Below, in pieces: positions 11,621-49,523 of a stretch of DNA of 64,000 bases; position 1 is the first letter of the stretch; every line of letters starts with the position of its first letter. The position numbers and the translations under genes were made by a program. Below the pieces are notes generated by a model, which saw only the letters and a program-made list of their open reading frames with translations, was not told the DNA's origin and searched no databases. Source of the stretch: Mizuhopecten yessoensis (taxonomy: Eukaryota); NCBI RefSeq assembly GCF_002113885.1, contig NW_018406643.1:66378-130377 (forward strand), written 5' to 3'.

Positions 11621-11624
11621 ACAA

Positions 11625-27068: not shown

Positions 27069-27323
27069 CCCAAACGACGCACGCGCAAGAAGGGCAAGCA
27101 GACGATGGTGCGCGTGGGGGGAGGCTTCATGGACTTGCCATACTATCTCCACTACCACGTGCCAATAAAGGTCTACCAGCTTAAACCGTACGCCCAGCTC
27201 TTCAACAAACATATGCTCATGATCAAGTCTAAACGGCCGGAATCGGCCACAGACCACAAACAATATGACCGGCCGAGCTGGACAACCATGAACAAAGGTT
27301 TCAAAGCCTTTGCACGTATATGA
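27069..27323 (+). CDS. Cluster gene B exon 2; partial GAS2-related (GAR) motif
   Basis: Acceptor tttatctcttccttag|CCC, phase 0; PKRRTRKKGKQTMVRVGGGFMDLPYYLHYHVPIKVY...MLMIKSKRPESA...PSWT. Confidence 0.85.
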   Translation, partial: PKRRTRKKGKQTMVRVGGGFMDLPYYLHYHVPIKVYQLKPYAQLFNKHMLMIKSKRPESATDHKQYDRPSWTTMNKGFKAFARI

Positions 27324-29560
27324 AACATCTGAGGGACCACGAACAGATTCCTAAAATTGACGATTGCTACCGAACATTTACGAATCTAAATCGGAAATAG
27401 ACGATTGAGATTCAACATTTCCAAACAAAGATGGTGGCAGAAAGTCCCGTACATGGAAGATATATTCAAAGTGTTACTTCATACAGAAAATATAGAGATG
27501 TGTTAAATAATTGATTTAAGATGGGAGAAAATCAATATCTGTGAAAGAAATTGCCTCTAATGTACTGTGATACCTATAAGAAATGTGTCATACATGATAT
27601 TTGTCTATATATTTGTTCTGTGGTAACATAGGCTTTGTTTAAGGAGATGAGATTGGAAACCACAGGGGCCAAACACATCGTTGTATTGGTCTTAAAAGCA
27701 GCATCATCCATATTCTCAAATAACGTTTTTCATTGATAGCATGTGTCTAGCCCCTGTGATATCAGTACTGCCGAGGTTGTTACCGTAATTCCTCGGTATG
27801 ATATATTACGTATGCTATTGCGTGTTAATTTGTGTGTTAGTGTACGGAAACCGTATAGCTCAACGGCCCGATATGTATTACTTCAAAAATCAAAAAAGAA
27901 ATCTATCGGACTTTTTAAAGCTACGATTTCTGCAGCTAGTGTGTTGTGCGAACGCGACTGGACATACTGTCATATTTTTTTTAATTAATAGCCTTTATTT
28001 ACCATGATTCATATTGACATTGGATTTCAGTATCAATATATGTAACACCTTATAAATATGTCTTTAATTAATTGATTAATCAGTTAAAAATCAACATTAT
28101 ATTTTTAAATATTTTATGTATTTTTTGGTGTAGAACTCTTTTGTGGAGATTTATGTCATTGTCACGTAGCATATTCCCTTAATAGTCGCCGTTATAGAAC
28201 TCGACCTCCGGACTTGTTCGGCACACTGCTATCCGAGTCGCTAGTTCACCAACCTTACACATTTATTAAAGATACTATTTTTCAAGCGTCCCGTAGTACA
28301 GACTTGTTTGTGAGAGTAAGGTTAAGACTAAGAAATTGAGCGTCTGTGAAACAGAGATATACTGTAAATGTAGATATTTTAGCGGTATTCTCATTTTAGC
28401 TCTTTTCGCACTTGAATTATTGCTCCAAATCATGAATGCGCCAAATAAAGTTTTTGCATGATGTTCTCGATAAAATATTTTTGGGATGCGCCAATACATC
28501 AACGCGCTAATCTATTAAAAATCTATAATGCGCTAAAATCAGAGAACGCTAAAATAACTGATTATGTTGTTTTGGGGTATTTTTACGAAGACGAACCGAA
28601 GATTACAAGTAGCCTTACAAGTATTTTACCGGAAATAACAAGCGGCCCACCAACACGGTAAAAACAGTTTTCATTTGTATTGTATGTCATGCTAAAAATT
28701 TATTAAATATAACATGTATGCTATATTATATAGTGTAAATTTTATAAATCATACATATATAAAGTTTTGTCATCACAATTATGATATTAAAAGTTTCATC
28801 CAGTGTATGTGTCATACATTAAGTTGTTATTACAGATATCTATGTATCATGACAGGGGCTACACATATCCTACTTATTCAATTAAACGTTATTTATTTTA
28901 AAATAATTATGAAATATTTTTTATCAAATGGAGGACAACACCAAACTCGTCTTTTCAGAAAAGAAAATCCACGAGAACGATGTAAAAAACCTATAATACA
29001 AAGTCATTATAACATAGCATATCTTAAATATGATTTTTTCGTTATATTCACGGCCTTGTTCGTCCGGTACCATCCTTCACACACTAACTCCGTGTTTACA
29101 GTGATGGTCGTGGGCAAAGGGGGAATAACTCTTTGCCTGGACCATGCAGATAGTTCTTTAAATTGCATTGGTGACTCTTAGTATATCATCCGAGGTATCA
29201 CACAGCTTGATTACAAGACATGTTCCGCGTGGACCCTATTCACCAAATGTACAGTGTAACATGCCGTTACATATATGGGTGAATTGTGACGCACACTAAA
29301 ACATTGCTACAGTGACCTACAGTTTCACATCACAGTGGAAATAAATGAAATGAATGAGGGATGTAGATTTTTTTATACACCACTGAAACTAGGTATCGAT
29401 GACTGATATAAACATCAAATACGATTCGACTTTCGACATTTTACACACTTTTAACCAAAATAAATAGGTCATTTTATATCACTCGGTTATCGTCACATCT
29501 CTTTTATCAATAGCTTACATTATGGATCGAAATATGCCTCAAAGGGAAAAGTATTAATGA

Positions 29561-29642
29561 GAGGGCCGCAGTGGCCAAGTGGTTAAGGCATCTGACCGTC
29601 TACGACTACTAGTCCTCCGCCATTTGGTCACAGGTTTGACGT
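29561..29642 (+). mobile_element. Truncated tRNA-derived SINE head (second family)
   Basis: gggccgcagtggccaagtggttaaggc (A-box-like) and degenerate B box ggtttgac; no full cloverleaf. Confidence 0.5.
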
Positions 29643-32106
29643 GAATCGCCGATAAAGACGCAGGTCGGTGGTTGCTGTAACTGGACATAAGCAAGTCTAG
29701 AAATGTATACATTGTACCTGTGTTAAATGATTTACATGTTATAATCATATATGTATACATTGTAGATGAGATGGAGGCGATTTAAATATCGTATATCTGT
29801 ATTGTAGATCGATAGGTGTGATGGGGAGATAACCCCCTACGATACAAGTACACATGCGAAGCTTTACTGTACGAGCAAAATTTAAATACTGTGATATTCT
29901 AACCGGAACGAAACCGATATTAGTCAATATACGTAAAACGTGTTATGTGTGGAGCCTTGTCAGCTTCATATGTCGTAAACTTTAGTTGAAAAATCAACCG
30001 GACAGGTATTTTTGATACTTAACGTCTCGTAAATTCAGGTAAAAATATACAATGCACAGATAGTTTTAATCTCCTTCACATCATATAGTCATCGGTCACC
30101 GTACATATTGAGTTTACATTCTGAAATTTGACATTTTAAAATAACGTTAAAATGAATTTTTGTTTATGATGTTTTCCAACAAAGCTAATTCGGTAAGATA
30201 TGACAGATTAACATACAGGATTCCAAAAAATTAAATGCAATGCCTTGCATGCATATGGTTTTGAAGATTTATCTTTAACCTTTAATGAGAACACGGGGCT
30301 ATTAAGTATATGAATACTGTCAAAAATCTTCACCAACATTACTGCTATGCAAGAACTTTTCTTTTGGCGGTAGCAAATACAGTAATTATTAACCTTATTT
30401 ACTAATAGAAATTTCGAGGATGGGTCCTTTTAGATTAACTGATACCATATCTATGAATTGTTCAACTCGGAGTTTGTTTTTAAGTCGACTTGTGACCAGT
30501 AATACTTATACATAGAAGATGAAGCAACAAAAAGAAAACGTTTTGTCAGTGTAAACCATCTCTCGATGGTCAATGTATTTTGTAATCGTAAACACCTGTA
30601 AATTGGGTTCCCATTTCGATGTTATGCAGGTAAAGCGTAGAATGGCAGTGTAAAAGTCCTTAGTTCTTCCCCTGCATTCGGGGTTTCTTTAATAAATCTA
30701 TTAAACCATCGTTATATGTGATTGTATGGAATATTTAAATTGACTTTTCTTAAAAGTGGAAAGAGCAATAATATATATCAACTTGCTGGTACTTTTTACC
30801 GTAAATACGAAACTTTTTTTCATATTAGCGATACTTCTTTTAAAATTTAAACTTCAATATAGAACTAATCTTTGGTATCAAATCAGTCATGGGATTTAAT
30901 GTAAAATCGCAATACGGCCTGAGAAAGACTGAGATCCCGATTACGTACCGCTGATAGCATGTATTGTCTGTGGAAAATGAATCCACTGAAGCGACAAACC
31001 AGGGTCCCACGTTCAACGGCCCGGGGCCGATAACAATGGAGCTGTGACCAGGACAAATCGCACGAGGCGAAGCGACGTCATAGGGCACAATGGAGGTCTC
31101 CAATATCTTGAAACAATGACGGTGAATTCGATCTCCGGATATCTCCATACAGGTGACGATAGACTCCAATTTGGCAGGGAAATGTCGTCTGTCACATATC
31201 TCAAGGTATTTCTTACATAGAAAGGCTTGACTTAAAACAGATCGGAAAATGGCATCCTAACACACAGCATAGATTCTTTCTGTGTGGTACTATCAAAATC
31301 GCAATTAAGAATTGCTTAGTGTTAAAAGAATTCCGGTTTGCCTTTTTTTCGACTTACATTAGAAGATTCGAGTTTGTGGATTTGGGTTGTGATTAAGACC
31401 TGACTTGTGTAGATGAATGATTGATGAAGGAATTAAGATAGCACATCTTGATATAATAACAGGACGACAGGATGGACACTCGTCTGACATCCAAGTCATT
31501 TTGTTGATTCGCTGAGTGCTGGAGTACTCGTGTGTTTCATATTTACAAATCGGACCGTAACAACTTAAAGTGTGAACGAATTAATCAATCGAAAATGGAG
31601 CTGTATACCATAGTGTTCAAGTTGATCTATTACATAATATATAAGGACGTGTCTAGGATATCAGAATCCCGTCGTCTAAACTGGACAACCTGACAATTTA
31701 CCATCGGAATTCATCCAGAAATATTGACGCTTTAATCCCTCGTGTTTTGAACGAGGACGGTAGTTCCCGAGATTGAGACGAAGCGACTCTTTAGTGCCGT
31801 TATACATATTAAGTGGTAGATCGCGTATCTTCTGTAAATCGCGGCACTGATGACCGTGAACTATGACGGTATAATCCGTGAGAATAATCAGATGGAATAT
31901 TATACATATGTATACATTTATATTGATTTTTGGTTAACGGTCGCGTATATTTTTATCCAGGTATACGTTTAAACTGGAATAATGTATCAGTGTGAAAATT
32001 CATAAGGCAGAAATGTTCCAAAGATCTCTGCCTGTTCCACGTATCTCGAAAATTTCAGTGTGAAACAAATATTTAATGTGAAAGAAATCCTGACGATTAA
32101 TCCGAA

Positions 32107-32706
32107 ATGGCGAGTGAGTTTTTTGCAAGGAAGTTAAACCTGGAGCTGGCCTTGAACCCGCTGTTCCATGGTCCGCACGAGGAGCTTATGGAGGAAACAC
32201 CCCCGGAAAAGGAGGTCAAGGCCCCGAAAAGAAGAGAACATACACATAGTGCTTCGCGAATTCATGGCGGCCATAACACCGGAAGTCAATCAAAATTCAC
32301 CACCGGAAGTCATATAAACAGTTTTGAGTTTAAAAATCGCAATCCGAAAGGTGTATATGACTTTCTTAAAGTTAAAATGGACCGTGAGATTGCTAGAACT
32401 AAAACGACTAAAATTCGAAAATTCTCTGGCAAAATAAAAAAGGTGGATGAGACAGAATCCGGAAATAGTGATAAAACAGAAAGGGTAGAAGTAATTGTCG
32501 AAGTGGAAGCGGATACGAAAAATACGGAAAGAACTAGTGATACATCGGAACCTAACAGCTATCAACAGACAGTAAAATGTGTGGTTCCAAAAACCGGAAG
32601 TGAAAAGACAGGCATGGTACCGGAAATACTACATTATTCGGACGATTTTTCAGAGGGTCCTTTGGAGGTGTATGAGCCGGTATTCGTGAGGTTTCCGGTG
32701 TGGAAG
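32107..32706 (+). CDS. Cluster gene C exon 1 (200 codons)
   Basis: ATG context gaaATGG; ends PEILHYSDD...EVYEPVFVRFPVWK at donor AAG|gtataa, phase 0, homologous to the exon-1 ends of A and D. Confidence 0.8.
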
Positions 32707-32956
32707 GTATAAACATGTGTTTTGAAAATGTTTCGTCTTAAAAATTCATGAATCACAGAATGTTGAATTATTAATATGAAATACTGAGTACAATCTGGCG
32801 TTTGGCTTACAGCACTCGTTTTATGGAACGGTCATTTTCACATTCTGCTAGTAAAGACTGACCGTTTATTAGGTACAGAATGTACATCGTCATATGTATG
32901 CCTAAAATGTCACGCTAAAGTTTTTAACAAATCATTTTATTTATTTTATATTGCAG

Positions 32957-33038
32957 CCAGCCAAACTCAACCACAGCTAAAGGAAATGAGAAACCTACTC
33001 TCGCAGTGTCCAGTACTGGGCGACATGTTGGATCATAG
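32957..33038 (+). CDS. Possible short terminal exon of gene C (tandem acceptors)
   Basis: ttttatattgcag|ccag|: the first AG gives PAKLNHS*, the second (32961) gives PNSTTAKGNEKPTLAVSSTGRHVGS*. No family motif in either. Confidence 0.35.
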
Positions 33039-33182
33039 CTAAAGGAATTTACGGAGAGCGTTCGGGCAGTTTCAAGACATTAAGCATGATCTCGGAGAAA
33101 AATAATAATCTATGAAAATTAAGTAAATACAGTCTAGATTATTTCCTTCTTGATTAGAAGCCACAATATTGAAAGATGATTG

Positions 33183-33718
33183 ATGTTTCCCATTAGCGCG
33201 AATGTTTCTCATTATAATGTATGTTTCCTATAAGAGCGTATGTTTCCCATTAGAGTTCGTATTTCCCATTTGAGCGCATGTTTTCTGTTTGTGTGTGTTT
33301 CCCGTTAGAGTGATGTTTCCCATAAACGCGATTGGTTCCCATTAAAGTGTACGTTTCCTATTAGACTGTACATTTCCCGTTAGTTATGTTTCCCATTTGA
33401 GTGTATGTTTCTTGTTAATTCATGTTTCCCGTTAGTGTAGGGTTCCTATTAGAATGAATGTTTTCCCGTCTTTATGTTTCCCATTAGGGTGTATGTTTCC
33501 CACTAGGGTGTATGTTTCCCATTAGGGTGTATGTTTCCCATTAGGTTTATGTTTCCCATTAGGGTGTATGTTTCCCATTAGGTTGTATGTTTTTTATTAG
33601 TTATTGATACTTATATTTATTNTTTTCCTCTTAGCGTATGTTTCCTATTAGAGTGAATGTTTCCCGTTAGTTATGTTTCCCATTAGAGTGTATTTTTCTT
33701 ATTAGTTAATGTTTCCCG
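33183..33718. repeat. Degenerate 19-bp minisatellite, ~28 copies
   Basis: Unit ccattagggtgtatgtttc, best conserved at 33475-33590. Confidence 0.88.
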
Positions 33719-34845
33719 AAAGTTTAAGTTTTCGATTAGAATGAATGTGTCCCGTATAGGTGCATATTTTTTTCTAGCACAGTACATATAAGTTTGTTTC
33801 CCATTGGAATGTATGTTTCAATGTGCCGTTTAAAGCGGTGTTTATTTATCCATGGGATTGATTTAAAAACTGATTCGTTTACGTTGATGAATGCTATATT
33901 AGATATTGCTAGACTGATCCAGCTGTCATTGCCGGGGAATGTTTTTGTTTTGTTTTGCTCCAGTGTTACGTTGAGACTGTGTTTCATTGATACCTATATT
34001 TTGGTTATAATTTCCATTGTGACGGTCGACTGTCTCATTTTGTACGATCGTGGTGCTTTGTTAGGTCTTTGTTAATATATATGAGAGGAGACAGTACGGT
34101 GACGATCAACCATACTGTGGCCCGAATCGAATGAGTTTTGTACAATGTTAATTAAAAACGGAATATAACGAAGCAGTGATTAATAATATGAGCGGACGTC
34201 TGTTTCAAAATTTTGCGCAGAATTATCCTTGGATACCCATTTTTATGAAAAAAAGGTCGATATACCTATTTATTTATGAATTTTTGTTAAATACTGTCCT
34301 CATGAATCATTTAACGATAAATCTAGCATTTTTCATACATGGCCATTCAGATCACTATACATGGTGTGCCGTCGTCTTTTGATCTTAGTACGATTACCGA
34401 GTCAGATTGATGGATAACTGTTCTGGTATACGTGTATACATATCTGGAGATGATGCGGTCACAGTGATTAAAAATATTTCAAAAGAGAGGGACAATGATT
34501 AAACATTCACGTGTCTATACCATAGTTTACTGTTTACTTATTATGACCATTTGATTGTATCCTTAACATAATTCTATATCACTGAAATTTACATATTAAA
34601 TAAAGTGATATCACCAATTTGAACATTGCGATATCACTAATTTGAACGAGCAAAATATAACGAATGTTTGTAAACATTTGTAAGAATAAAAACATTTTGT
34701 AAATACATCTTTCACATAAACCAATATAACATTTTTTTATAAGATACTTGTTTCTCAGCAAAACATTTTACGTTTCGTTTGATTTTCAAGATTATTGAAT
34801 TTATGTTGGTCGTGAACCAGCATTTTCCCAATAAATGCTCATAGT

Positions 34846-34919
34846 CAATCGGGAACCGTCGGTACTTTCCGTAAACGCAAAAATACTCATTAACGGAAAG
34901 TGCCGATAGTTCCCGATTG
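34846..34919. mobile_element. Hairpin MITE with CAATC...GATTG ends; decayed relative at ~20803-20872
   Basis: caatcgggaaccgtcggtactttccgt...acggaaagtgccgatagttcccgattg; flanks tgctcatagt / tgttcatagt form a 10-bp TSD with 1 mismatch. Confidence 0.8.
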
Positions 34920-36121
34920 TGTTCATAGTTTGAAACATCTCACACTACTTTCGGTTATCTCAGGGCAATCTGATTATCTGTTAGTTCTTTGACAAATCGA
35001 TAAGATGTTTGAGAATATCGTCCAATCCAGATAACAAATGTGTTATGCTATTTTGGTTTATGTATTTATAGAATGCTTTTATTTTTTCAAATGATTACAA
35101 ATACTCGTTATATTTTATTGAATTCGAACGTCTATTTTATAGATGATGCGTGCTGATCTTATGGCCTCGACACAGATTTCGTTACAAGTACCCAGTGGGT
35201 CCTTATTTAGACATAAATTAAGTCAGATAAAAGCAACATTATTATTGTTTGGTGTTTTTTTCAAGACGATGCAAAATGTATAGTACCTTTAAAAAATGGG
35301 GAGGGGGATGTCGTTATTTTGATGTACTGACGAATTTAATGGAATAATTGCGCTATGGAAAATACATCATAATAGCACTACTTAGGACTAATTATCAGGT
35401 ATGCCATTATAAATGCCCCTTCCTATGAAACTTTCAAAAATAGTCTTAAGCACCCTGAATGCTTATAAGGGCTTCCCCGTTACAACGAAGTTCTTGATTG
35501 AATATCGAATGCAATTTTGACCAGACTTACACATAAATGTAGATCGCTAAATCCAGATTGCTTTTGCTGTGACTTAAGTGGTTCACCCTCATGTTGGTGC
35601 AGTCATCCCCAGCAAAAACAAAACAAAACAAAACTATGTTCTTTCATGCAACAAACATAATAAGATCAGAAATGATCAGATGAACAAATTCACCATTATC
35701 AACCAATCTCTCTTAAACTGCTCTTATCGGATGAGTGTAACTATACGGTATGAAGAAAACGCTTTTATTTTCACTTCCGTCCAATGGTTCGTTTCATATT
35801 CTCGACTTTTCTCCAAGTTACATATCTCTTGAAATGTACGTTGTTCAGAGAATCTGAAGTTATGGACTAGACAATGGATTTGACCTTTTGCCTGCAGACC
35901 GAATCCTGAAGCTTGACGCAACGCTTTGCCATCCCACATCTTTCACTTAAATTGCAATAAGTCATGTTAAGGCGTTTTGACCTTTGATCTAAATGTGATC
36001 TTGACCTTTGGTGTGCAGGCGCAACAGTGGTGAGCATACGGACAAAATATTGGTACGCGACACATAGTCTTGCAATCCTTCACATATCCCTTAAATGTCA
36101 TTCAGCTATCTCCAGCGAGTC

Positions 36122-36210
36122 TAGTCTCGTTCAACCAGACTCTTTTTGTCTGCACAAGCTATGCCCAACAGAGTATTACTAGTGAACAAGCGTCTGGTTG
36201 ATCGAGACTA
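36122..36210. mobile_element. Hairpin MITE with TAGTCTCG...CGAGACTA ends and a perfect 9-bp TSD
   Basis: tagtctcgttcaaccagac...gtctggttgatcgagacta flanked on both sides by cagcgagtc (36113-36121, 36211-36219). Confidence 0.88.
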
Positions 36211-37800
36211 CAGCGAGTCAGAAGTTGTGGCCAAAACATGTCGGACGGATGGACAAAGTGGCGACTTTATGTATCCCGATTTTTTTCTAGGAGCATAACA
36301 ACAACATGGGGACCACAAGTTCCGGACGGTTATAGAAGCTTTTTGTTCTCATTTCTGAGGGCAATAAATGTAGTTCACTGACGTAACGCACTCGCGCTTT
36401 TTGGAAAGATACTAGGCAATCAATTCCAAGTCAAAAATATATCGAATAATATGGAATTCCTCTTCGTTAGAGATAAAAAAAAACAAAAAAAAAAACATAG
36501 CAATGGGACATTCCACCTGGTCTTTTTGCGAGGGAACGCAATAGTATCGTTACTGCAGAGCCAGGATTTTGTAAACATTAAAAAAAACGAAATGATTATA
36601 ATATAGTATAAATAAACGCTGCACAAAACTGGAACTCTTCATTGGAGATAATTCACAGATCGCTGGAACACTCCACCTTAACGTAACAGTTAATGTAGTC
36701 ATTCCAATACTAGCGTGGTTTATAAATGTCACATCCTGAGACACGGTCTGGTTTCTCGTCGTTTATAATGGCATTCCACCCTTGTTGGAAATTGATTTTA
36801 TATCGTTCCCGAACATTAAAACACTCGTAAATAATTGGTGTCCCCAGATCGATAATGGCGTTGTGTATTTAAACGACATGAAGGCGGATATTGTTCGTGT
36901 GTCTATGGCTGGTCTGCTCAATACACAGGTGCAAAAAAATAATACATTGGTGGCCTTTCTTTTTGTTTATCAAACCGTAAACCCGTTTCACTAAATTCTC
37001 CGTTGTAAGTAAGGTAGTGTGGCTAAATGTGAACACGCTTGTATACAATCAGAACATGGCCTGTTTGGCACAACGTTCGGGACTAAATGTGAAATTATTT
37101 TATTTTATTACCCATTTTACAAACTGATTGTATATAGCTTATGACTGTATAGCTTTCCAAGTCATTGTAATATTTGTTTTTTTACGCCAATTGTATATGA
37201 TGGAGGCCGTATCGAGTATCGATATATAGGCGTGCTTTTAAAAAATCTAAAGATTCAATATTTTATTTATGTTTATGCTTATTAGTTATTTTATGAATGG
37301 GGCTTTGTATAATAATCTGAATGTTGGCATTCCAACGTGTTAATAAACAGTGTTTATTTGTATGTATACCTTCCCATGTACGCCGCCTTACCTGTTGTAT
37401 AGATATCTCATTGTGACGTGTTATCATAAGGACAGGTAAGACACCTGGATACATTCCCCCGTGGCGTTCATCGCTATCGGATCTAGAACAATTTTATTAT
37501 GAACCCTCGCTGTAGTTAGCTTTCAAGTATTCAGGACTTTAAACGACATTTTTGTACCTTAGTATATAAACGCGGCCAGTTACTCACGTACCTGGATCAA
37601 TCAACGCCGAGATACGTTTGTGTTTTATATCCCGTTCGATAGGATTGAGAAAAGTGTGATTGACTAGGCCACTTGGTGTTGGTCAGTGTGGTCAACACGT
37701 ATGTGTATTCCATGTGCCATAATCGCCTTGTATTCAGCCAGGCTGTCCTAAACCACAATCGCCATCACTGGGGCGCTCTACTTTCATTTCGTGAACAACA

Positions 37801-38547
37801 ATGGCCACCATCGAGTGCTGGCAACCATATACGCCTCTGGACCAATTACTTTCCTCCACCCTAGTGCTGACGGACGGAGAGGGGGATGTCGAGCACGTGA
37901 AGAAGGAACTCCCAAGGTCAACCCGACGGGCCATCAAGTTCATACGGAACCAAAAACTCCGACCGAGACCCGGTTTCCAACGACGGGAGACTTGGATGGA
38001 AAACCAGCTTCGGTTATCAGGAGACGCTGTTTACCTCGACCTGGTCAAGACAAACAATCACTCGACTTTACGGCGTGAATCGTCCCAGTCAAAAAACTCC
38101 TCGACAGAAAACAAAAGACGATGGATTCATTTAGATTTATTAATGGATCCAAGTATTAAGGAATCTTCCAAACGCCTCGTCAGGACCCGTCCATCACAGA
38201 ATGTCGTATACAGAAGGGAAAATGTGGATAGAGCTGTATATTCATTAAAAGAACCTTTTGAGCCTATCCCGGTATACGAACAGCAGATACAGAGGATGGA
38301 AAAGCGTTCAAGTAGAAGCCCTAGACATACCAACAGGATTAAGCGTCTCGGTGATTCTGACAGGAGTAAGAGTTTGGAAGACATCGATAGAAGTGAAACT
38401 CCGCGTGATGGTTCAAAAGGAAACAACACAGGGGTCGTCTCAAAACCAAAAAACTACACCGAGATTCTTCATTACGTCGACGACGCAAAATCCATGGGTG
38501 CAATTGATTCGTTCGAACCTATCTACGTCATCAACAGGAAATCAAAG
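37801..38547 (+). CDS. Cluster gene D exon 1 (249 codons)
   Basis: ATG context acaATGG; ends TEILHYVDD...DSFEPIYVINRKSK at donor AAG|gtatgt, phase 0. Confidence 0.82.
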
Positions 38548-39091: not shown

Positions 39092-42002
39092 AGACGGTAA
39101 AATTCACCAGATCTTAGTTTTAGATTATATTCATCTATTTATTTTTATATCATTATATAGTTAGCAAGTCTCGATATGTCGAAGTCATTTGAACTAAACA
39201 ATTTTTAAACTTCGGGATAGGTTCGGTGTAGTACTACACCAAAAATGCACTAAAATTAATATAAAACAAACAGGAACACATGTGCCAGGTTCCTGTATAT
39301 CAAAACATAAATTTGTATTAATAGGAAAACTCGAACTAATCGACTTCGAAATAGCGAGGTTTTGCTATTAACAATACCGTACTAACTTTACCAAACATAT
39401 TATACAGTCGTACAAGACACAGTTTATGGAAGGTACCGTCGAGAGAATAACTAGAACATAATGAATTTACCACCATAAATCGTGTCGTCGGCTTGTGGTA
39501 TAGCTAGGCCAGACAAAACAATTGTTATTTCCGCTTTCGACCTTCAGCCTTCAAAAACCATGATAAACTGACTATTGTTTTTATTTGGCAAACTATTTCA
39601 ACAAATATCGCATATCGGGACAGCTTTTCTGACTTAAAAGGTGCTTGTTTGGAATCAATTGGGTGTTGTTTAGTTAAAGGCGTTAAACCTAGGGTAGGCT
39701 GAAAAAGTGGACACATAAACATTTCTGGCAAAATGTAGAAAATTATTAATACATTTTCTATCATTCGTAATTATACAGTGTAGCCATCCCGCTAGTAACA
39801 AAAGGTATGTTGTGGGTCAGGGTTTTGTTTGCGTTTGCATGAACCATGTATAGAGCTCTTTCTTATCCAGCTTCGTCTTGCTTTCGCTGTTTGCTTGTTC
39901 CTTTGTCTGCTGTGATTGAGCTCTAAATAAAGGGTTTACATGTCTGTTTTTTCGCTGTACACCTTGACGAGTTCTTTGATCTTGTATGTTGCATTGTTTA
40001 CGTTAATTGCATGAGTTGATAATTAGTACGCAACCGCTTTTAACTCATTCACCCCTGATATTTCATATTGAACTATTCCAACCTTTGAATTGGAAGAGTT
40101 CAAATGTGTCTTCAGGGTTGAAAGAGTTAATGAGTTTTTTTTACACAGACAATGCATATCACATATAAACAGAACTCCATTGGTATGTATTATCATCATA
40201 AAGAAACATACCGACTCCAAGACAGCTATTGTATTTGTTGATTTCTTCTCTTCTTCCATTTTAAACGTCGCGCTACATGTTGTCCATTATGACGTCACAC
40301 TCAGGTAAAAACCGGCCTGGCCACAGTGTCCCGATAATTTGTTACATTTGGTATTTTTGTACCTTTCCTTGTGTGTAGAGAGTAATATTAGACGTTTTAA
40401 GGGTTTGAATCAAATCGTCGGGTCCCTGTGGTTCTGATCAATAATGAAGTTTATCGAAGTGTAATTATAAATTGAAAATGTTGGTTACGTGTTGTTTTAT
40501 AAAAATGTAGTCAATAAGAATGTGGCTTCTGATAATAGTTCTGCTTTAGTAGCATGCTAGTCATCTATGATATGTCGCACACTATAACAGATTTGCGTTA
40601 ATACGCAACTACGTGTTCGATATTCTTTTAATTGCATGATGCTTGGGTCGGCAAAATAGCATCTAATTGCATAACATGACATCGGTGTTATATTGATAAC
40701 ATATTAGGATAGTCAAGAACAACTCTCCAAGCTTCCGGTTTCTTATCGGGTACTTCAACCTGCATTGTTTATTGATAGGTAAATATTTACATCACCGTTG
40801 GTTACAACAGGGTATCGTGCAGATGAAACCGAGTACAACACTTCAGATATCATATACAACATATTCGGTTTTGGCTATGACTAATAGCACGGTGACGCAG
40901 TGCATTTATAGTTTTTAATAGTTAAAGTCTCCGTGCATTTAAAATGTCAGGGACAGATTTTATCGTAAAATACTTGAACACTTACAGGTATCTTATTTTT
41001 TAATTTGAAAAGTTGGGTATATGCATATGATTTAACTTGTTAGGCAAATTTGGTTATTTTTTGTTAAAAATGGTTTAAAATTAAGGAAATATCTTTGTTG
41101 ATACAAGTGCTATCATATAATATAAGTGATCACATTAAGTAGAATTCGGCTATAAAATACTTACATGTGATATGTTTACCTGCGAGTTTGTCAAATCACA
41201 TTTTGTCAATCCGTAATTATGTTAAAAAAAACACCTTTCTATAAACTTAATTTATTTTATAACAATTATGATACAAGTTACTCATTTGGAAGGAAACAAG
41301 GAGGGGGGGGGNATATTTATTGAGCGGTCAGACCGTTCGAATCTGGTCTACTACAGTATATACATGTATCGTATTTCATATAAAACAATCGCCACAGTAT
41401 ATTTAACTAACTAGGTATTAGATTACAGAGGTTTGGTAGATGTGACGTACACACGTGTGTTGTTGTTGTACTGTGGACACGTGTGTTATTGGAAATGTCC
41501 ATTGTAACTGGGGGTCCAGTTACGTTTAAATTATCGTGACCTTCTCGGCGAGGCTCGGTGAGCAATAACGTTCCTAACAAATCTTTTAACTATCAAACTC
41601 AATAGCTTAAATGTATAGTAGATAATTATTGTCTGGGTCGAGTACATGTTTGTAACAAGTCGGTCCTTCAAAATCCTGTCCCGTATTATGTACCCAGCCT
41701 TGGAATCGTAAGTGGCCTAATTTGGCAAATTACGTATTCTATAGATGATCGCGTGAATTTTGATCTGAAATTGACATCTATTACGATATATAACATTCTT
41801 ACAAACACGGGGTCTTCCACTATGGATTATTCAAATGTGTTGACGGTTTCTAAGTACGCGATTACCAACGTTGGATTATTTCACACCCTTTCCGAAAGTG
41901 ATAGCCGCAAGCACGTTAACACGAGCTACTCTGACATTTTCACGTTAGTATCCAGTATATACTGTCAAAGTGGACGAATTCAAGGCCGTTGACGCTCTCA
42001 GG

Positions 42003-42731
42003 ATGAAGTTGTGTGAAGAACTAAAACAATGGAAACTTTTCCTACCAAATCAACCTCTTATGTTACCTTTTGCACCGAGCATGCCTAGACGGAAATCCCG
42101 ATCTCGGCCTCGCCGGAAACGGAAACCACCAGACCCACCGGAGAAAGTTACCATCACAGTGAATGACACAGGTGGACGAACAGTTGCCGTGGAGCGCGTA
42201 GTCCCCAAACGAGAAAAACAAGTCTTGCGGAGGCTGAGCAGAGAGGAAGCAGGCGAAAATGAGGCTGCAAATAGTCGATCTCAAAATATATCAACACAAA
42301 CTACTCTACAGGACCTTGAATTTCTCATCACGGACCCCCGAATTCAGGAGACCAGGGGGCCGAGGAGGGCGTGGCTGCCCGAGGAGGTGGTCTACACGCG
42401 CCAGACCACTGCCCACCGGACTTACCACACGGGCGACACCACCTTGAACGTGGAACATAGGTCCACAGATAATATTGTTGTCCAAATCGACAAACACGGC
42501 TCCGCCCGAGTGGACAATGAAAAGGGACAAGAGGACAAGGAGAACGGACGCAGGGAAAACGAACATGGACAAAGGGTAGAAGGGGGAGATACGAGGGACA
42601 AAGAAGAAACAAACAGAAAGTTTACAAATAATGGCAAACGAATTACATTTTCAGACGAAACTGATAAGACAATGGCACAGACCGACAAGGAAAAAACGGA
42701 CGGAACGACAAGTGTTCGTGCCCCAAGCAAG
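42003..42731 (+). CDS. Cluster gene E exon 1 (start uncertain; frame open from 41949); ~331 aa spliced
   Basis: First in-frame ATG at 42003; ends ...KRITFSDETDKTMAQT...VRAPSK at donor AAG|gtaagg, phase 0. Confidence 0.78.
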
Positions 42732-43404
42732 GTAAGGAGCAAATTACAACAAGTCGAATCTCATACAGCTAGTATTCGCTACACCTACTCGGAGATTAAT
42801 TGTGGATTAAATTTCAAAGTATAAAATACCAATCAAGTCGGTTGACGAACCAGATCTGTAAATAATGAATCGGAATTATATTTGATATGTTCTAAATTGA
42901 GGCTACACACGGCGACCCCGTGTATATTGTTTACATGGTATTCGATATATTCGTGAGATATGGCTACACAGGGGACGATGTGTCCGATTGAATTACAATG
43001 TTATGTTTTGATCGGGTGAATTCTTTTACAATAATTTATTTTATTTAGTAAAATGTTTTGTAACTATATTAAGACAATGGCTTTCTGGTTGCCTTCGTAA
43101 CTCTTGGTTATAGTTTCTGGCGAGACTTACTGAACGGCTTTGCCTCATCTCCCGAGAAAATATAAATAATTCCAGATCAAAAATACAAGTCTCTGCTGTA
43201 TTTCATTATGTAAAACATTTTACTTTTTACCTTGGTTACATGTTACTGTGTTACCTATGACCTTTTTAATAGTTGAAGTCTCCATGCATTTGAAATGTCA
43301 GGGAAAGATTTTATCGTAAAATACTTAAACACTTACAGGTATCTTTTTTTAAATTTGAAAAGTTGGGTATATGTATATGATTTAACTTGTAACTATTATT
43401 ACAG

Positions 43405-43671
43405 GTGGCTAAAGCTTGCGGTCATAAGCTACCAATGGTTCGTGTTGGAGGGGGGTGGATGGAAGTGCCAGATTATCTCCGTTCTCACGTACCGATGCAC
43501 GTGCATGTCGAGAATACAAAAGACGGACAAGAAGGGAACTTGATAATCAGGTCACAGCGACCTAGATCACAAATGTTCTCGAAAAAGGGAGAAAGTCCGA
43601 GCTGGACGGCAACACTGAGCAGGGGTACCAAAGGGAGCGCTTCAACGACAATGAGACAAAGACTTGTGTAG
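43405..43671 (+). CDS. Cluster gene E exon 2; partial GAR motif
   Basis: Acceptor ctattattacag|GTG, phase 0; VAKACGHKLPMVRVGGGWMEVPDYLRSHVPMHVH...NLIIRSQRPRS...PSWT. Confidence 0.85.
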   Translation: MAKACGHKLPMVRVGGGWMEVPDYLRSHVPMHVHVENTKDGQEGNLIIRSQRPRSQMFSKKGESPSWTATLSRGTKGSASTTMRQRLV

Positions 43672-44153
43672 AAAGAGAAACTTTAGAGGAAAGGTGACGG
43701 GAATAGGTCAATTTGGCAAATGTCCGAGAAATGTAGGTCACTTTGACCTCTGTGTGAGAAGAATAGGCTGCAATGACCTTTTATGTGAGGGATGTAGATT
43801 AACTTGACCCCTGCTGAATCAGATTTTGGGTAATTATTTTGAATATGTTGGTGCGAGATTATGACTCAAATATCGATACTCGAATAGGCAAGCTCGACGT
43901 CATAACGGTGTCATTCGATGTTTTGGCAGAGTTATTCAGCATCACGTCATGGGGATAATCACTTTAGAATCTGAAAATTTAATGTACTGAAACCTTTATT
44001 TTCTGCTCATGATGCGTCTCATACTCTTGTGTTGCCATATCTCACCGCGAACATCGTTATAGGAGACTGTAGTGCCATCGGAAGAAACTATGAATACAGT
44101 ACCATTATTCATTTTCTTTGTTGAATTACATATATATATACTAGTATATATAT

Positions 44154-44442
44154 GGGGCAAAGAAGTAATTCCAACAGTGTGGACAAGTTTAGGTTGTCAA
44201 ATTTTCGGAGCGATCCGCTCCTTTTTCAAGACACAGTGAAACAGAACAGTTACATGTACATATACATCATATTACAAGAAGATAGAATCGATATACTATA
44301 ATTGAAAATATAGCTATTATAAAAAAACCAATAGTACCCTCGGCTAAAGACAGCCGAAGGCAGCAACTAAGCATCGCGGACAAGGAACGCTGATGTAGAG
44401 GACCTATTCTTGCGCAAGATGCACTATCATATAAAGTGAGTT
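44154..44442 (-). mobile_element. Penelope-like LTR/retrozyme-type insertion containing a minimal hammerhead motif (44195-44233)
   Basis: 289 bp flanked by the 15-bp direct repeat tactagtatatatat (44139-44153, 44443-44457); minus strand contains TGTC-TTGAAAA-A-GGAGCG(gat)CGCTCC-GAAA-ATTT-GACA. Confidence 0.6.
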
Positions 44443-45098
44443 TACTAGTATATATATATGTACTCAGAAGTTCAATTACGACATTACCTGCCGAAAGGTC
44501 ACTGAGTACACCAAAGTGAAAATCCCACTCGCTTGTTACTGGTGCACTTGTGTCCTACTTTATTGGTTATAATGTTTTACATTTTAATAATATTTTATTT
44601 TTCATAACTTTTAATATTTGTATATTTGTGTGCCTTTTCTTTGTTGTCAATCATTAATAAATCTATCTATTTTACTAGTTTTGTTTCAAGGTTATTTTGT
44701 ACACAATTGAAAACAGATTTTTTTGGTAAAAAAACAACAACAACATAATGCTGCGCTACTGGATATCTTTGAACCTGATAATATATATTGTTTTGATTGA
44801 TATGTGTTTTCAGTTTAACATCAATAACAACTTTGACTTAGGTTGGCAAACATTGAGGTAAGGGAGATAATCCCTATGTATTAAGCGAAAAAAATCATAT
44901 CCAATGAAAGATATTTTTTTAAATGATGTGAAAAATAATCAAACTACGATATACGAACGTGTTGTTTCCCCAAGGGTCAATATACATCTAAATTATCAAT
45001 ACCAGGTATTTGTTTTGAAACGGTCGACCAATCGGAAACTTTTAGAGAACGAAATGTCATAATTAAGATACAATCACGATTATTAGAAGGATATGCAA

Positions 45099-45290
45099 TG
45101 GTTGGTCAAGTGGCGCATTGGATAGCGAGCTCGCCTGTCATCAAGGCGGCCGGGGTCAATTGCCCGACTACGCGGGTTTTCTCCGGATGTTCCGGTTTCC
45201 TCACACATTAAGACCCCAGGCGCTGTCATCCGGGTCAACAAGAGAGATGAATAAAAGTTGATAAAATTTGATTGACAATTGTTGTAAAAG
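45099..45290 (+). mobile_element. tRNA-derived SINE with V-domain-like core, copy 2 (internally deleted)
   Basis: ggttggtcaagtggcgcattggatagcg...gcgggttttctccggatgttccggtttcctcacaca; homologous to the 17402 and 51850 copies. Confidence 0.7.
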
Positions 45291-46424
45291 AACTTTAAAA
45301 TTTACAATGGGACATCGATCACTCGGAACCCTCGGAAATCAATCTTACCTATTGCTATAACTAACTTTTATGAAACCTTCCAAATAAAACATTTATATTT
45401 CATTATATGAAAATTGATTAATATGTTGTGTCCCACAGTTTGTTGGATAGACAGGTTAATCTTTCGGATCTGCCTTTTCTCTCAATGTATCACGGTAGAC
45501 GAATAAATGATACCAATATGGAGTATCCCAAAATGTGTCGAATTAAACAGTGTCCAACGTAAGTTAATTTGATTGTTATGCAGTATTCCACAAAGTGTCG
45601 AACTACACAGGTTTTCCTGTGGATTTGATATATAAATCAAACTAATCTACTCTTGATATTAATTCACTCCATTAATTATCATTTACTGTAAATAATCAAT
45701 GTATATCTAAAAGAACACCTGCTGATTCATGCAAATAAATCCCTATCCAGATAGTTCAATATGGACGTTTCAAAACAAAAACCTTTCTTCCACGTGTAAT
45801 ATGATTTATCAAGATAAAAAAAAAATAAAAAAATGTTTAATTAAAATATGAAAATATCAACGTATGGGAAAGTTAAATGCATGATATATCAGGTAATTTG
45901 TTTAAAGTATTGGTGATGCGTTCCTAAAAAAATCACATATCCGGGAGTTTATTTTAAGGTAATGTATCGTACCGTTGAACAGCAATGTCTTCATTTTTAA
46001 ACTCGCTACAGTCCCATTCAGAAATAATATGTTAGACTCATTTCACGAGTTGTCTATGGTGTGAACTTTAATACCGTTATTACATATGTATATATATTTA
46101 CCTGTATCAGGCGTACTTTTTATGTAACTTATAATTCGGTAACCTGTTTGAAAACCTCGTCAAATATCGCCTTCAGATATAAATGTATACACTTATATGA
46201 ACCGTCATAGGTACAAACATTCAATATAATTGTATAAGTACACCGTATTGTTCACTTTAGAATAACATAACATGTATTCATCTGATACACAGGTAGCTTG
46301 ACACTGGGGTCGTTCGTACGCCTACTCATATAAGAACAGTATTTAAATTTAGTTAGTCAAGTATACCTTAAACATTTTGTACGTGTCCCACAACGATCAA
46401 AGATATCTTTTTAATAGCAGCAAT

Positions 46425-46990
46425 CTCTATAAAACGACCTTCTGTATCTAGAAACTACCTTAATAAAGTGAACACATGTCTGTAGTAGCCACCTCTATAA
46501 AGCGCCCCCTGCCAAAAAATATATCTTTATAAAGCGATCGTTTTTACCTTGAAATGCGCTCTACAAATCGCATGCGTGTACCAGAATGTAAAAATCATAT
46601 GGATAGCAACAAAGTGTGTAGTTGTCACCTCTAGAAAACGACTACGTATCTAAGGTAGTCACCTCTATAAAGCGACCACATGTGTGTAGGAACACTCTCT
46701 ATAAAGCGCCCTCTGCCAACCTTTATAAAGCGACCGTTTTATCTTCAAATATCCTCTATAGATTTTCTACATGTACCAGTATGCAAAATCCATATACATA
46801 GCAACATTTACGTATTAGCAACCTCTGTAAAACTACTACGTATCTGTGGAAGCAACCTCTGTAAAGCCACCTATATCTATTGTAGTCACCTCTACAAAGC
46901 TACGATATATCTGCCGTAGTAACCTCTTTAAAGCGACCACATGTGTGTAGAAATAATCTCTTTAATGCGACCATATATTTGCGACCACGT
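46425..46990. repeat. Degenerate repeat cluster (cacctctataaagcgacc motif) with an internal ~190-bp duplication
   Basis: About 10 variants of acctctataaagcgacc; segments ~46425-46620 and ~46625-46820 align. Possibly a decayed MITE interior. Confidence 0.6.
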
Positions 46991-47597
46991 GTCTATAGAC
47001 AAAATTTACAGTGTGTATTGCGGTTGCTATGCACATGTTCCTCGATTACTTTAACATATATATCGTAATTAGCACGATACATGTGTGTGACGGCTAATGT
47101 CAATAACGTTAACGCCACCCATGTATTAACCATCACCACAAAGGCGATCGGTCAATATTAATTTAAAAACTGAACAGAAGAAAATCGTCCGACCGATCAG
47201 CGAAAGTTTTCAGTCCAAGGTTTTAAACATGTGTATACTTGAAATCGAGCAGACCCGACATAACGGTAAGACACCTCTATACGTATGTAAATTATGTATT
47301 TATACAGGTACATGTAAGTGACACGCGGTGTGTGTCGTCGCTAAGCCGTCAGGGTTTGACAATCAATGACTGTCACTAGTAATAGAACCCGACAGGTGAA
47401 TTGTGTCTGTAGGAACGTGGACTAAGGGACCCGGTATCACAGCCACTCATTCACTGGCAATGTCTGTATTCGACTACGGTCGTGTGTTGTGAAATGACAA
47501 ACAAGATATGTAGGGATGTTTGTTACTGACAGCTGAAAAATATATATATTTATGAAAGGTCACGTTGCTCTAACGAAATAGACACCGGATATTAGAA

Positions 47598-48509
47598 ATG
47601 TCTCACAGAGAACATCGGACATCCTCGTCAAGGCGATCCCGGAGACGTGAAAAGCGGAGCGTGTCGGATGATTCCGATGATGGCGGCCGGATTGTTGAAG
47701 TGAGGCGACGTCCGGCGTCGGCAAGCGACCTCCGACTTCCCGAATATCGTCATAACACCAGTGACGAGAAGGGACAGAAAAAGGCACACCGGAAGGAGAA
47801 AAAAATCACGCGGAACACCAGAGAGGAACGTACTCTCGAATATGTAACAAATAGTGGACATCACGAGCAGCGCCGACCCGTAACGAGGGCGGCGTATCAG
47901 AGTGACGGCGAGGAGATTAATGACAGTGATACCGGAAGTGATAGTACCGTCCGGCGCATGAAGGAACATATGCGCTACTACGCAACACAAAATACCCAGG
48001 CTGCGTCGGAAACAGGCGAGCGACGCATTGTGTACTATAATGCGCGTAACAATGGCCGTCCAATGTCGGACGTCGGCACACAGCTCGTGCAGCATGTCCG
48101 ACAGGACAGTATGCGAGAAAACCGACGTGTCAGCAGACCTCGGTCGGCATTCAGTGAACAGATCTTACATACACGAGATGGCGACCGTCTTGTTGAGCTG
48201 GAGAAACGGGAGGAGGGCAACAAAGTATATTACAACTACCGCCTGAAGGAAGAGGCCAAGCCGCCTCCAGTCCCAGTCAGACGCATGCGTAACGTGGGGG
48301 TACAAATGACCACTAAATACGTTGTTGATCAACCACCTCCGGTCAAAACCAAGAGCGCCGGTACCCAGACTCCGGCACCACCGCCCAAACCTCGCCCAAG
48401 GACACCTCCAAGACTGATTAGAGTAGTTCGCCCAGAGACACCTCCTCTTAGAGTAGTTCGCCCAGAGACACCCCCTCCCGTGGAGGTTATGGAGCCCGTA
48501 CCCGCAGTG
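47598..48509 (+). CDS. Cluster gene F exon 1 (304 codons); ~377 aa spliced
   Basis: Arg/Ser-rich then Pro-rich ORF; ends EVMEPVPAV at consensus donor GTG|gtaagt, phase 0; clearly similar to gene G exon 1. Confidence 0.87.
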
Positions 48510-49301
48510 GTAAGTAGACAAGCAATTATTTGCTATTTGTACAATTATGGTTTAATCATTTAGAGCAGATGGAAAGTTTAGCAAATTAAGTGTTCAATTA
48601 CTTTAAAAACGAAAATCAACAGCTGATGGGAAATGGGGGGAACATAACTTATAATCGTTATAGTCGTAGCAATAGTGGTAAGAATGGCACAACAAGAAAC
48701 ACTGACCTCTACGATCCGTAATAACCAACTGAACATTATTGTTTCCTTAGTCACATGTTACAAGTACAACGGAATCTTATTAATCCGGACACCATAATCA
48801 TCGTTTTCCGGACATTTGTATTCGAGAAACAAAGTTACCCATGTCTCAACATTCCTGTTAATTCAGATTAGTCGAAAACTTGAGGGTCTGGTTTAATGTA
48901 AAGGGGGCGTAGAAGATTTCCACATCAGCCTTACACTTTTTATAAATGAAGATATACAAGGAAGATTTGTGACTTTGATTTTTACCTCCCTGGTCAAAGT
49001 AGTCATATATTTCATTTTGATGCGGTGAATTTATATTTCCTCAATAGCAACATAGAATTAAAAGTTGATGGGTCCCAATTTTTGACCCTAGAATAGATTT
49101 GAAATATTCCTAGTTTGAAAAACTACTATAATTATTGGTAAAGTGAAAAACAGGTGTGATTTGTTTAGAGCAATTCTCCAGAAAATGACTTTAAAAGTAT
49201 TTCATAATATTGATAATATCTTTGATAATTTTAACTTCAGTTTTGGGAAACTTCTGTCCTACCTGTCGTCGCATGAACCTGTAACTTTCTCACTCTTTCA
49301 G

Positions 49302-49523
49302 ATTCCAAAGGCCAAGTCAGTGATGGTGCGCGTGGGAGGAGGCTGGATGAAGGTCGAGCATCATCGCAATCATCACATACCTGTCAAAGTATACGAACAT
49401 AAGCGACGTGCTAGCGCTGACGATAACAAGTTCCTTTTCATTAAGTCCCGGTTCGCACGGAAGAAGAAACAAGTACCAATAGCTTATAAAATGTATAGAG
49501 AGAAACTGGCACAGGCCAACTAG
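49302..49523 (+). CDS. Cluster gene F exon 2; partial GAR motif
   Basis: Acceptor ctttctcactctttcag|ATT, phase 0; IPKAKSVMVRVGGGWMKVEHHRNHHIPVKVYE...KFLFIKSR...VPIAYKMYREK. Confidence 0.87.
   Translation: MPKAKSVMVRVGGGWMKVEHHRNHHIPVKVYEHKRRASADDNKFLFIKSRFARKKKQVPIAYKMYREKLAQAN

What the first reader, a model, noticed from the sequence alone, without database searches (positions are those of the whole stretch)
27105..49400. Half a GAS2/GAR domain: MVRVGGG[WF] without the Zn-binding ligands, in three paralogues
Seen: B MVRVGGGFMDLPYYLHYHVP, E MVRVGGGWMEVPDYLRSHVP, F VMVRVGGGWMKVEHHRNHHIP. Established: VMVRVGGGWxxLxx[FY]LxxxDPC is the C-terminal signature of the microtubule-binding GAR domain (Pfam GAS2) of GAS2/GAS2L and spectraplakins, where Zn is held by an N-terminal CxC plus the D and C of DPC. 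Here the spacing to the Pro is kept, but DPC becomes [VI]P[IMV]. No CxC/KYRFG half and no CH domain precede it; the exon starts only 7-12 residues upstream. Inference: a captured GAR fragment refolded with new downstream strands into a Zn-free or His-liganded mini-domain.
Basis: partly seen in the sequence, partly recalled or inferred. Interest (0 to 1): 0.82.

Follow-up and report, generated by a model that had tools for sequence, protein, structure and literature searches.

The report
Scallop genes reusing GAS2's last exon
A tandem family of scallop genes joins a long disordered first exon to a copy of the last exon of a GAS2-like cytoskeletal gene. The proteins therefore carry only the microtubule-contacting half of the GAR domain plus GAS2's own dimerisation tail, with no zinc site.

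Summary
MVRVGGG[WF] lies at 27105, 43435 and 49323 in three + strand terminal exons, and Pfam GAS2 matches only profile positions 43-68. The genome is Mizuhopecten yessoensis.

The piece is a captured GAR fragment, but it is the whole last exon of a GAS2-like gene:
- The intron sits at the same place and phase (R|[ILF]L..H.MVRV) as in canonical GAS2 genes.
- A full-length CH+GAR parent gene lies on the same scaffold.
- The "new downstream strands" are not new. A profile-profile comparison (99.2%, E 1.8e-19) runs from the intron to GAS2's C-terminal [FY]LxIKSKYKS tail, which is the region shown in 2025 to dimerise GAS2.

RNA-seq shows gene F is a plain two-exon transcript with no hidden exon for the N-terminal half. 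The exon-1 end motif shows no similarity to that half.

The family occurs in scallops, mussels, pearl oysters and ark clams, and it is under purifying selection. It keeps the tubulin-contact residues R252, the GGG hairpin, W257 and H267, and lacks all four zinc ligands. The parent gene has already lost the D and C of DPC.

A likely role is zinc-free microtubule binding and bundling, which is untested. Structure prediction gave only moderate confidence and no match to a known fold.

This is a new variant of a known kind, of moderate interest.

The parts
25650..26408 (+). Gene B exon 1: disordered coding exon with no Pfam domain, donor GAG|GTTTGT in phase 0
   Evidence: It equals residues 1-253 of P0001 = XP_021356502.1.
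27069..27323 (+). Gene B terminal exon: half-GAR (MVRVGGGF at 27105-27128) plus a GAS2-type tail (MLMIKSKR) and the stop
41970..42731 (+). Gene E exon 1: disordered, donor AAG|GTAAGG in phase 0
   Evidence: The join matches the Pecten maximus orthologue P0007.
43405..43671 (+). Gene E terminal exon: half-GAR (MVRVGGGW at 43435-43458) plus the tail (NLIIRSQR)
   Evidence: It is 92% identical to the Pecten orthologue, against 63% for exon 1.
47598..48509 (+). Gene F exon 1 coding part. The transcript starts near 47330-47380. Disordered, donor GTG|GTAAGT in phase 0.
   Evidence: RNA-seq depth is 40-90 and contigs start at 47327/47382.
49302..49523 (+). Gene F terminal exon coding part: half-GAR (MVRVGGGW at 49323-49346), the tail (KFLFIKSRF) and a C-terminal helix (VPIAYKMYRE). 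The 3' UTR runs to about 49790.
   Evidence: The splice joint 48508/9 to 49301/2 (GT..AG) is seen in 75 RNA-seq reads and 2 contigs.
18333..19655 (+). Gene A exon 1: disordered, ends in the EPVFV motif, donor GAG|GTAAGT in phase 0
20152..20370 (+). Gene A probable terminal exon: keeps the tail (PLDVYDRR ... RFLVVKTR), but the MVRVGGGW part is replaced by a Pro-rich stretch
   Evidence: HMM hit at E 0.005, sequence. The splice is inferred and has not been seen in RNA.
53695..54318 (+). Gene G exon 1: disordered, F-type, carries the VGVQMTT and TQT motifs
61204..61485 (+). Gene G probable terminal exon: tail kept (KYIYVRPR, VPMGYEMY), G-hairpin degenerate (VVVHTEHTGRAGY)
   Evidence: C3316:127596-127859, E 1e-22. 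The splice is inferred.

Best explanation
These are members of a family of two-exon genes specific to pteriomorph bivalves.

Origin. The family most likely began when the last exon of a mollusc GAS2-like (CH + GAR) gene was duplicated without its upstream exons and came to be spliced to a new, long exon that encodes disordered protein. That last exon starts at the ancient phase-0 intron inside the GAR domain. It encodes strands beta4-beta5 (the 'G-hairpin' MVRVGGGW), helix alpha2, and the whole post-GAR C-terminal tail.

What the protein carries. It has half a GAR domain followed by GAS2's own tail. The zinc knuckle is gone: the CxC lies in the missing exon, and D and C of DPC are replaced by hydrophobic residues.

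Inferred mechanism. The module is a zinc-free, low-affinity microtubule-lattice contact. R252, the GGG hairpin, W257 and H267 are kept. A K/R-rich linker stands where beta3 K237 and R242 were. The contact would be made effective by dimerisation through the inherited tail. The disordered exon would supply other partners, for example the conserved TQT-type motifs.

Shown here: homology, exon origin, gene structure, expression of gene F, selective constraint, and loss of the zinc ligands. Inferred: microtubule binding, dimerisation, and independent folding of the module.
For: - Partial Pfam hit only (positions 43-68), in the exons and in the full proteins.
- hhalign of the family against full GAS2 GAR+tail: Prob 99.2%, E 1.8e-19. 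The 52 aligned columns begin exactly at the intron and end at GAS2's C-terminal KYKS.
- The best PDB sequence match is GAS2 itself (1V5R, 9KBW), ahead of MACF1.
- Same intron position and phase in the parent gene (QIR|GTAAGT ... cag|FLQNRHLMVRV), in the DPC-type GAS2-like gene on C3723, and in many database fragments.
- A full-length parent gene (CH exons, N-half exon, last exon) lies at C3316:520014-540735 on the same scaffold. Two family genes lie 8-27 kb downstream of it, and all copies in the genome are on this scaffold.
- RNA-seq shows gene F expressed, with a single GT..AG joint (75 reads) and no other exon.
- Family members are found in Mizuhopecten, Ylistrum, Pecten, Mytilus, Pinctada and Tegillarca. 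In the tree the family sits on one side of a branch (16 of 18 rows at 97/87, all 18 at 86/61).
- Constraint: pN is 0.15-0.50 while pS is saturated (>=0.77). The MVRVGGG codons differ only synonymously. The terminal exon is 92% identical between orthologues, against 63-74% for exon 1.
- An et al. 2025 (PMC12084551) place the microtubule contacts on beta3-beta4-beta5-alpha2, namely R252, G254-256, W257, K266 and H267. R252E and W257E raise Kd 40-70-fold. Residues 277-314 are required for dimerisation and bundling.
- The columns nearly invariant across the family and GAS2 are M, V, R, V, G, G, G, W, H, P and L.
Against: - No biochemical data exist for any member.
- AF2 confidence is only moderate (pLDDT 77-80, pTM 0.44-0.49), and the model resembles no solved fold, GAR included. 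The half may therefore not fold alone.
- The zinc site is reported as important for the integrity of the GAR fold (Lane 2017, as cited in PMC12084551). Half a domain without it may not present the hairpin correctly.
- The beta3 contacts K237 and R242 are missing.
- Genes A and G have lost the hairpin but kept the tail. The tail, not tubulin contact, may therefore be the core function.
- B has F in place of W257.
- The order of events (partial duplication, or loss of the 5' exons from a full copy) cannot be told from these data.
Confidence: 0.8

Rival explanations
1. The family keeps a complete but highly diverged GAR domain. The conserved motif at the end of exon 1 (EILHY.D ... FEP[IV][FY]V) would be the degenerate N-terminal half, so this is an ordinary, zinc-less GAR domain and not a half.
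For: - A conserved motif is pinned to the exon-1 donor in genes A-D.
- In Pinctada P0013 the Pfam match reaches back to position 37 (YIFVKK), with beta3-like spacing.
- Gene G has YIYV at the same spacing.
Against: - hhalign of the exon-1 motif against the full GAR+tail profile gives Prob 0.09% with 1 aligned column.
- The family-versus-GAS2 alignment stops at the intron.
- AF2 predicts no secondary structure upstream of MVRV in the F type.
- The motif is absent from E and from the Mytilus and Tegillarca proteins.
- There is no CxC anywhere nearby.
Confidence: 0.07
2. The conserved, functional part is only the inherited GAS2 C-terminal tail, acting as a dimerisation or other interaction module. 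The half-GAR hairpin would be a hitch-hiking remnant with no microtubule role.
For: - Genes A and G retain the tail but have lost MVRVGGGW.
- The GAS2 tail alone decides dimerisation and bundling (PMC12084551).
- B has W replaced by F.
Against: - MVRVGGG is invariant in six scallop copies although synonymous sites are saturated.
- It is also kept in mussel, pearl oyster and ark clam proteins.
- The conserved positions are exactly the experimentally important tubulin contacts.
Confidence: 0.2
3. The exons are decaying relics or annotation artefacts, such as pseudo-exons left by segmental duplication of the GAS2-like gene, and have no function.
For: - The genes form a tandem array in repeat-rich DNA.
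- C and D show no recognisable last exon.
- A and G are degenerate.
Against: - Gene F is transcribed and precisely spliced.
- All frames are open.
- Orthologues exist in several bivalve orders.
- pN is far below pS.
- The terminal exon is more conserved than exon 1.
Confidence: 0.03

Closest known systems
GAS2 proper (vertebrate GAS2; mollusc GAS2-like such as Littorina XP_070190906.1; the scallop gene at C3316:520014-540735)
   Same: The whole terminal exon is homologous: the G-hairpin MVRVGGGW, helix alpha2 with H267 and the Pro, and the C-terminal tail [FY]LxIKSxY. The intron position and phase are the same. The mollusc full-length genes already read HHDP[VI] or HHNPV instead of KHDPC.
   Different: The family has no CH domain, no N-terminal GAR half (alpha1, CxC, beta1-beta3) and no zinc ligands. 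A 250-750-residue disordered exon stands in their place. F-type members add a C-terminal VPIAY.KYRE helix.
GAR domain of spectraplakins (MACF1/ACF7, PDB 5X57 and 5VE9; Pfam PF02187)
   Same: It shares the VMVRVGGGW...P signature over profile positions 43-68.
   Different: The match is weaker than to GAS2. Spectraplakin GAR has the zinc-binding CxC/DxC core and is followed by GSR and SxIP regions, not the GAS2 tail. The whole fold is present there.
CH + acidic linker + last-exon module proteins (cluster of P0030, transcript contig from SRR24189501, organism not identified)
   Same: Only Pfam positions 41-68 of GAR are present, followed by the GAS2 tail. This is a second architecture that uses the last-exon module without the N-terminal half.
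   Different: These proteins keep the CH domain. They may be a splice form or a separate lineage. No relation to the bivalve family has been shown.

Membership tests
Pfam GAS2 / GAR domain (PF02187) | Match across the whole 69-position profile (alpha1, CxC, beta1-beta3, G-hairpin, alpha2) | tested here: not met
   Only positions 43/47-68 match in the exons and in the full proteins P0001, P0003, P0005-7, P0015 and P0064. P0013 reaches position 37. Controls P0022 and P0008 match 1-68 and 5-68.
Pfam GAS2 / GAR domain (PF02187) | Four zinc ligands: N-terminal CxC plus D and C of DPC. This is established knowledge (Lane 2017, Dobyns 2018); the papers I could read state only that a zinc-binding motif exists. 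| tested here: not met
   There is no CxC within 50 residues upstream. DPC reads VPI, VPM or IPV in the window genes.
Pfam GAS2 / GAR domain (PF02187) | G-hairpin MVRVGGGW with R252 and W257, plus H267 in alpha2 (tubulin contacts, PMC12084551) | tested here: met
   M, V, R, V, G, G, G, W, H and P are invariant or nearly invariant in A6. B has F in place of W.
Pfam GAS2 / GAR domain (PF02187) | Binds the microtubule lattice | not testable with these tools
   This needs co-sedimentation or imaging.
GAS2 proper (CH3 + GAR + C-terminal dimerisation region) | N-terminal type-3 CH domain | tested here: not met
   No Pfam family is found in any exon 1 or in the full proteins.
GAS2 proper (CH3 + GAR + C-terminal dimerisation region) | Conserved C-terminal tail after DPC, ending in [FY]LxIKSKYK | tested here: met
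   The hhalign alignment runs through the tail at Prob 99.2%.
GAS2 proper (CH3 + GAR + C-terminal dimerisation region) | Phase-0 intron between beta3 (..R) and [ILF]L..H.MVRV | tested here: met
GAS2 proper (CH3 + GAR + C-terminal dimerisation region) | Homodimerisation through the tail | tested here: inconclusive
   The complex prediction returned no verdict. It counts neither for nor against.
Bivalve 'IDR + GAS2 last exon' family (LOC110452355-like, uncharacterised) | Two-exon gene: a disordered exon 1 joined in phase 0 to a last exon homologous to that of GAS2 | tested here: met

The most novel reading that the evidence does not exclude
The last exon of GAS2 encodes a self-sufficient, zinc-independent microtubule-binding and dimerising unit (G-hairpin + alpha2 + beta-hairpin tail). 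Bivalves have used it for over 400 million years as the anchor of a family of disordered MAP-like proteins that carry conserved LC8-type motifs. This would show that the zinc knuckle and the N-terminal half of GAR are dispensable for tubulin contact.
Probability: 0.3. Interest if true: 0.6.

Novelty: new variant of a known kind. Interest (0 to 1): 0.5.

Why it matters
- The family is a natural deletion experiment on the GAR domain. Evolution has kept exactly the strands and residues that the 2025 cryo-EM work identified as tubulin contacts, together with the tail that dimerises GAS2. It has discarded the zinc-binding core, whose mutation causes lissencephaly in MACF1.
- If the module still binds microtubules, it defines a minimal GAR and shows that the zinc site is structural rather than functional. 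If it does not, the family shows how a domain fragment can be re-used for another purpose.
- It is a clean, datable case of a new gene family born from a single exon of a neighbouring parent gene.
- It corrects database labels such as 'titin-like', 'asparagine-rich protein-like' and 'GAR domain-containing'.

Tried and rejected
- Homodimer prediction of the 73-residue F module gave no verdict (score 0.00, fold uncertain, my alignment was not used). It is not evidence either way.
- Structure searches with both AF2 models found nothing. Foldseek against PDB gave nothing at E <= 0.001. VIA-align wide gave no hit at Z >= 2 for the 121-residue model and a best Z of 2.1 for the 73-residue model. I therefore cannot say how the strands pack.
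- My own idea that the exon-1 end motif (ILHY.D ... EPIYV) is a degenerate N-terminal GAR half was rejected by hhalign (Prob 0.09%).
- Family-type last exons for genes C and D were not found. Only weak, unconvincing candidates turned up at 36382-36603 and 39260-39307, without good acceptors.
- dN/dS could not be given as a ratio because synonymous sites are saturated.
- The look-up of encoding contigs did not return the window's own gene calls.
- Dobyns 2018 (PMC6288423) is not held, so the identity of the four zinc ligands rests on established knowledge.
- A joined (spliced) model was never typed or searched. Exons were searched by reference, and full-length proteins were taken from the database.
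Full report
**What is there.** The window is AT-rich animal DNA (37% GC). It belongs to Mizuhopecten yessoensis scaffold C3316 (705,815 bp). The protein of gene B is XP_021356502.1 / OWF48988.1. On the + strand lies a tandem array of seven similarly built genes, A to G. Each has a long first coding exon without any Pfam domain that ends at a phase-0 GT donor. In A, B, E, F and G this is followed by a short terminal exon behind a phase-0 acceptor. Pfam GAS2 (PF02187) matches each terminal exon above its gathering score, but only over profile positions 43/47-68 of 69. The same holds for the full-length database proteins.

**It is the whole last exon of a GAS2-like gene, not a bare half-domain with new strands.** An exhaustive profile search with the six scallop terminal exons found 349 proteins. 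The top hits are bivalve proteins with the same build: a disordered N-terminus with the module at the very C-terminus. The next group is ordinary CH + GAR proteins of the GAS2-proper type. In that group the match runs past DPC into a conserved C-terminal tail ending in [FY]LxIKSKYKS.

- A profile-profile comparison of the family with full GAR+tail sequences gives Prob 99.2% and E 1.8e-19. The 52 aligned columns begin exactly at LLKGRH|MVRV and end at the GAS2 C-terminus.
- The best solved relatives by sequence are GAS2 (1V5R, 9KBW), ahead of MACF1.
KFLFIKSR) are therefore inherited.

**Exon origin.** Canonical GAS2-type genes of this genome split the GAR domain by a phase-0 intron after the beta3 Arg. 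Examples are ..VFVR|gtaagt ... ttccag|ILRNHVMIRVGGGW on C3723, and ..VVQIR|GTAAGT ... cag|FLQNRHLMVRVGGGW on C3316. Many gene fragments from other animals start at the same point. The family's acceptors sit at that position and phase, 7-12 residues before the Met.

A complete GAS2-like gene lies at C3316:520014-540735. It has four CH-region exons, the N-half exon 537729-537860 with CKC and GEGKY, and the last exon (partial model P0008). Two further family genes follow it, with terminal exons at 557.9 and 567.2 kb. The window array lies about 400 kb upstream on the same scaffold. Homologues of the terminal exon occur nowhere else in the genome. The parent's last exon already reads HHNPV in place of KHDPC. 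Gastropod full-length orthologues read HHDP[IV]. Erosion of the zinc site therefore began in complete GAR domains.

**No hidden N-terminal half.** Four lines of evidence agree:

- RNA-seq raw reads (run X21) cover F exon 1 (depth 40-90) and the terminal exon (about 50), with zero depth in the intron.
- The only joint in 44000-49900 is 48508/9 to 49301/2, GT..AG, seen in 75 reads. The same join is in contigs of two other runs. Transcript contigs begin at 47327/47382.
- Gene models for B (NCBI) and for the E and F orthologues in Pecten and Ylistrum make the same joins.
- The conserved motif at the end of exon 1 in A-D has no similarity to the GAR profile (Prob 0.09%). AF2 predicts no secondary structure upstream of MVRV.

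**Age and constraint.** Named members come from Pectinidae, Mytilidae, Pteriidae and Arcidae. In a tree of last-exon sequences, 16 of 18 family rows form a starred group (97/87). All 18 lie on one side of a branch (86/61), with the full-length genes on the other side. The alignment is short and the tree unrooted, so a single origin is favoured but not proven.

- Between scallop paralogues, synonymous sites are saturated (pS 0.77-0.98) while pN is 0.15-0.50.
- The MVRVGGG codons differ only synonymously among six copies.
- Between species, the terminal exon is 92% identical against 63-74% for exon 1.

**How it probably works.** An et al. 2025 (PMC12084551) solved GAS2-GAR on microtubules.

- Contacts come from beta3 (K237, R242), beta4 (R252), the G254-G256 hairpin that enters the intradimer groove, W257, and alpha2 (K266, H267). 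R252E and W257E raise Kd from 0.69 to 47 and 27 uM.
- Residues 277-314, the tail, are required for dimerisation, bundling and nucleation.
- Mapping by the 1V5R alignment, the family keeps R252, GGG, W257 (F in B), H267 and the Pro, plus the tail. These are also the nearly invariant columns.
- The family lacks K237 and R242, which are encoded by the missing exon. The 7-12 residues before the Met are consistently K/R-rich.
- All four zinc ligands are absent, and no four-His site is conserved. B and E have few His residues, so a His-liganded metal site is unlikely as a family feature.

I infer a zinc-free, dimeric, low-affinity microtubule-binding module at the end of a disordered protein. This is not shown.

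- AF2 gives beta-beta-alpha-beta-beta-alpha at pLDDT 77-80 and pTM 0.44-0.49, with no similar solved fold.
- The dimer prediction gave no verdict.
- Genes A and G have lost the hairpin but kept the tail. This keeps alive the rival that the tail is the essential part.

**Comparison and novelty.** The family fails membership of the GAR domain family as defined, because it lacks the full profile and the zinc ligands. It also fails membership of GAS2 proper, because it has no CH domain. It is nonetheless demonstrably derived from GAS2's last exon. Databases label members 'uncharacterized', 'titin-like', 'asparagine-rich protein-like' or, automatically, 'GAR domain-containing'. Two literature searches found nothing on bivalve or partial GAR proteins. 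I rate it a new variant of a known kind, of moderate interest.

Noticed in passing
window 48060-48330 (F) and 54080-54230 (G); also P0003, P0006, P0013, P0015: F-type first exons share a bipartite motif, R[HND]VG[VC]QM[TN]T.Y followed 10-25 residues later by [KR]N..[TIC]QT. It is conserved from scallop to mussel, pearl oyster and ark clam (seen in the sequences). The second part resembles LC8/DYNLL TQT-anchored motifs. LC8 binding would fit a dimeric microtubule-associated protein.
   Followed up: partly
window 19560-19655, 26340-26408, 32620-32706, 38460-38547: A conserved motif, E[IV][IL]HY.D ... [FY]EP[IV][FY]V, ends 6 residues before the exon-1 donor in genes A-D. It is not related to the GAR N-terminal half. 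Its function is unknown.
   Followed up: partly
window 32107-32706 (C) and 37801-38547 (D): Genes C and D have family-type first exons with good phase-0 donors, but no recognisable family-type terminal exon downstream. They may be truncated, may splice to a diverged exon, or may be pseudogenes.
   Followed up: partly
L025 (Logan contig SRR24189501_158317), proteins P0030 and P0175-P0179: These transcript-length contigs encode a CH domain, a long acidic linker and only Pfam positions 41-68 of GAR plus the GAS2 tail. This is a second, CH-containing architecture that lacks the N-terminal GAR half. The organism was not identified.
   Followed up: partly
proteins P0042, P0051, P0057, P0022, P0035, P0038, P0008: Several complete invertebrate GAS2-type GAR domains lack the fourth zinc ligand or more: DPH, DPK, DP[IV], NPV, and FPQ with WHC in place of CxC. 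Zinc binding may therefore not be universal in GAS2-proper.
   Followed up: no
P0039 (Batillaria attramentaria KAK7479167.1): This protein model joins a prominin fragment to two tandem GAR-like domains, and the second is followed by the GAS2 tail. It may be a chimeric gene model.
   Followed up: no
window 7179-8147 (+): An intronless 322-residue ORF matches Pfam Sulfotransfer_2 (PF03567, E 6e-41), so it is a carbohydrate sulfotransferase-like gene.
   Followed up: no
window 44000-44450: RNA runs show very high contig and read depth here, with many loose ends and variants. This looks like a dispersed repeat or a highly expressed element just downstream of gene E.
   Followed up: no
window 3700-5300, 10200-14600, 55240-56400, 60060-61060, 63430-64000: There are several long tandem-repeat arrays, some of which create long spurious ORFs in several frames. 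The 60060-61060 array lies inside the presumed last intron of gene G.
   Followed up: no
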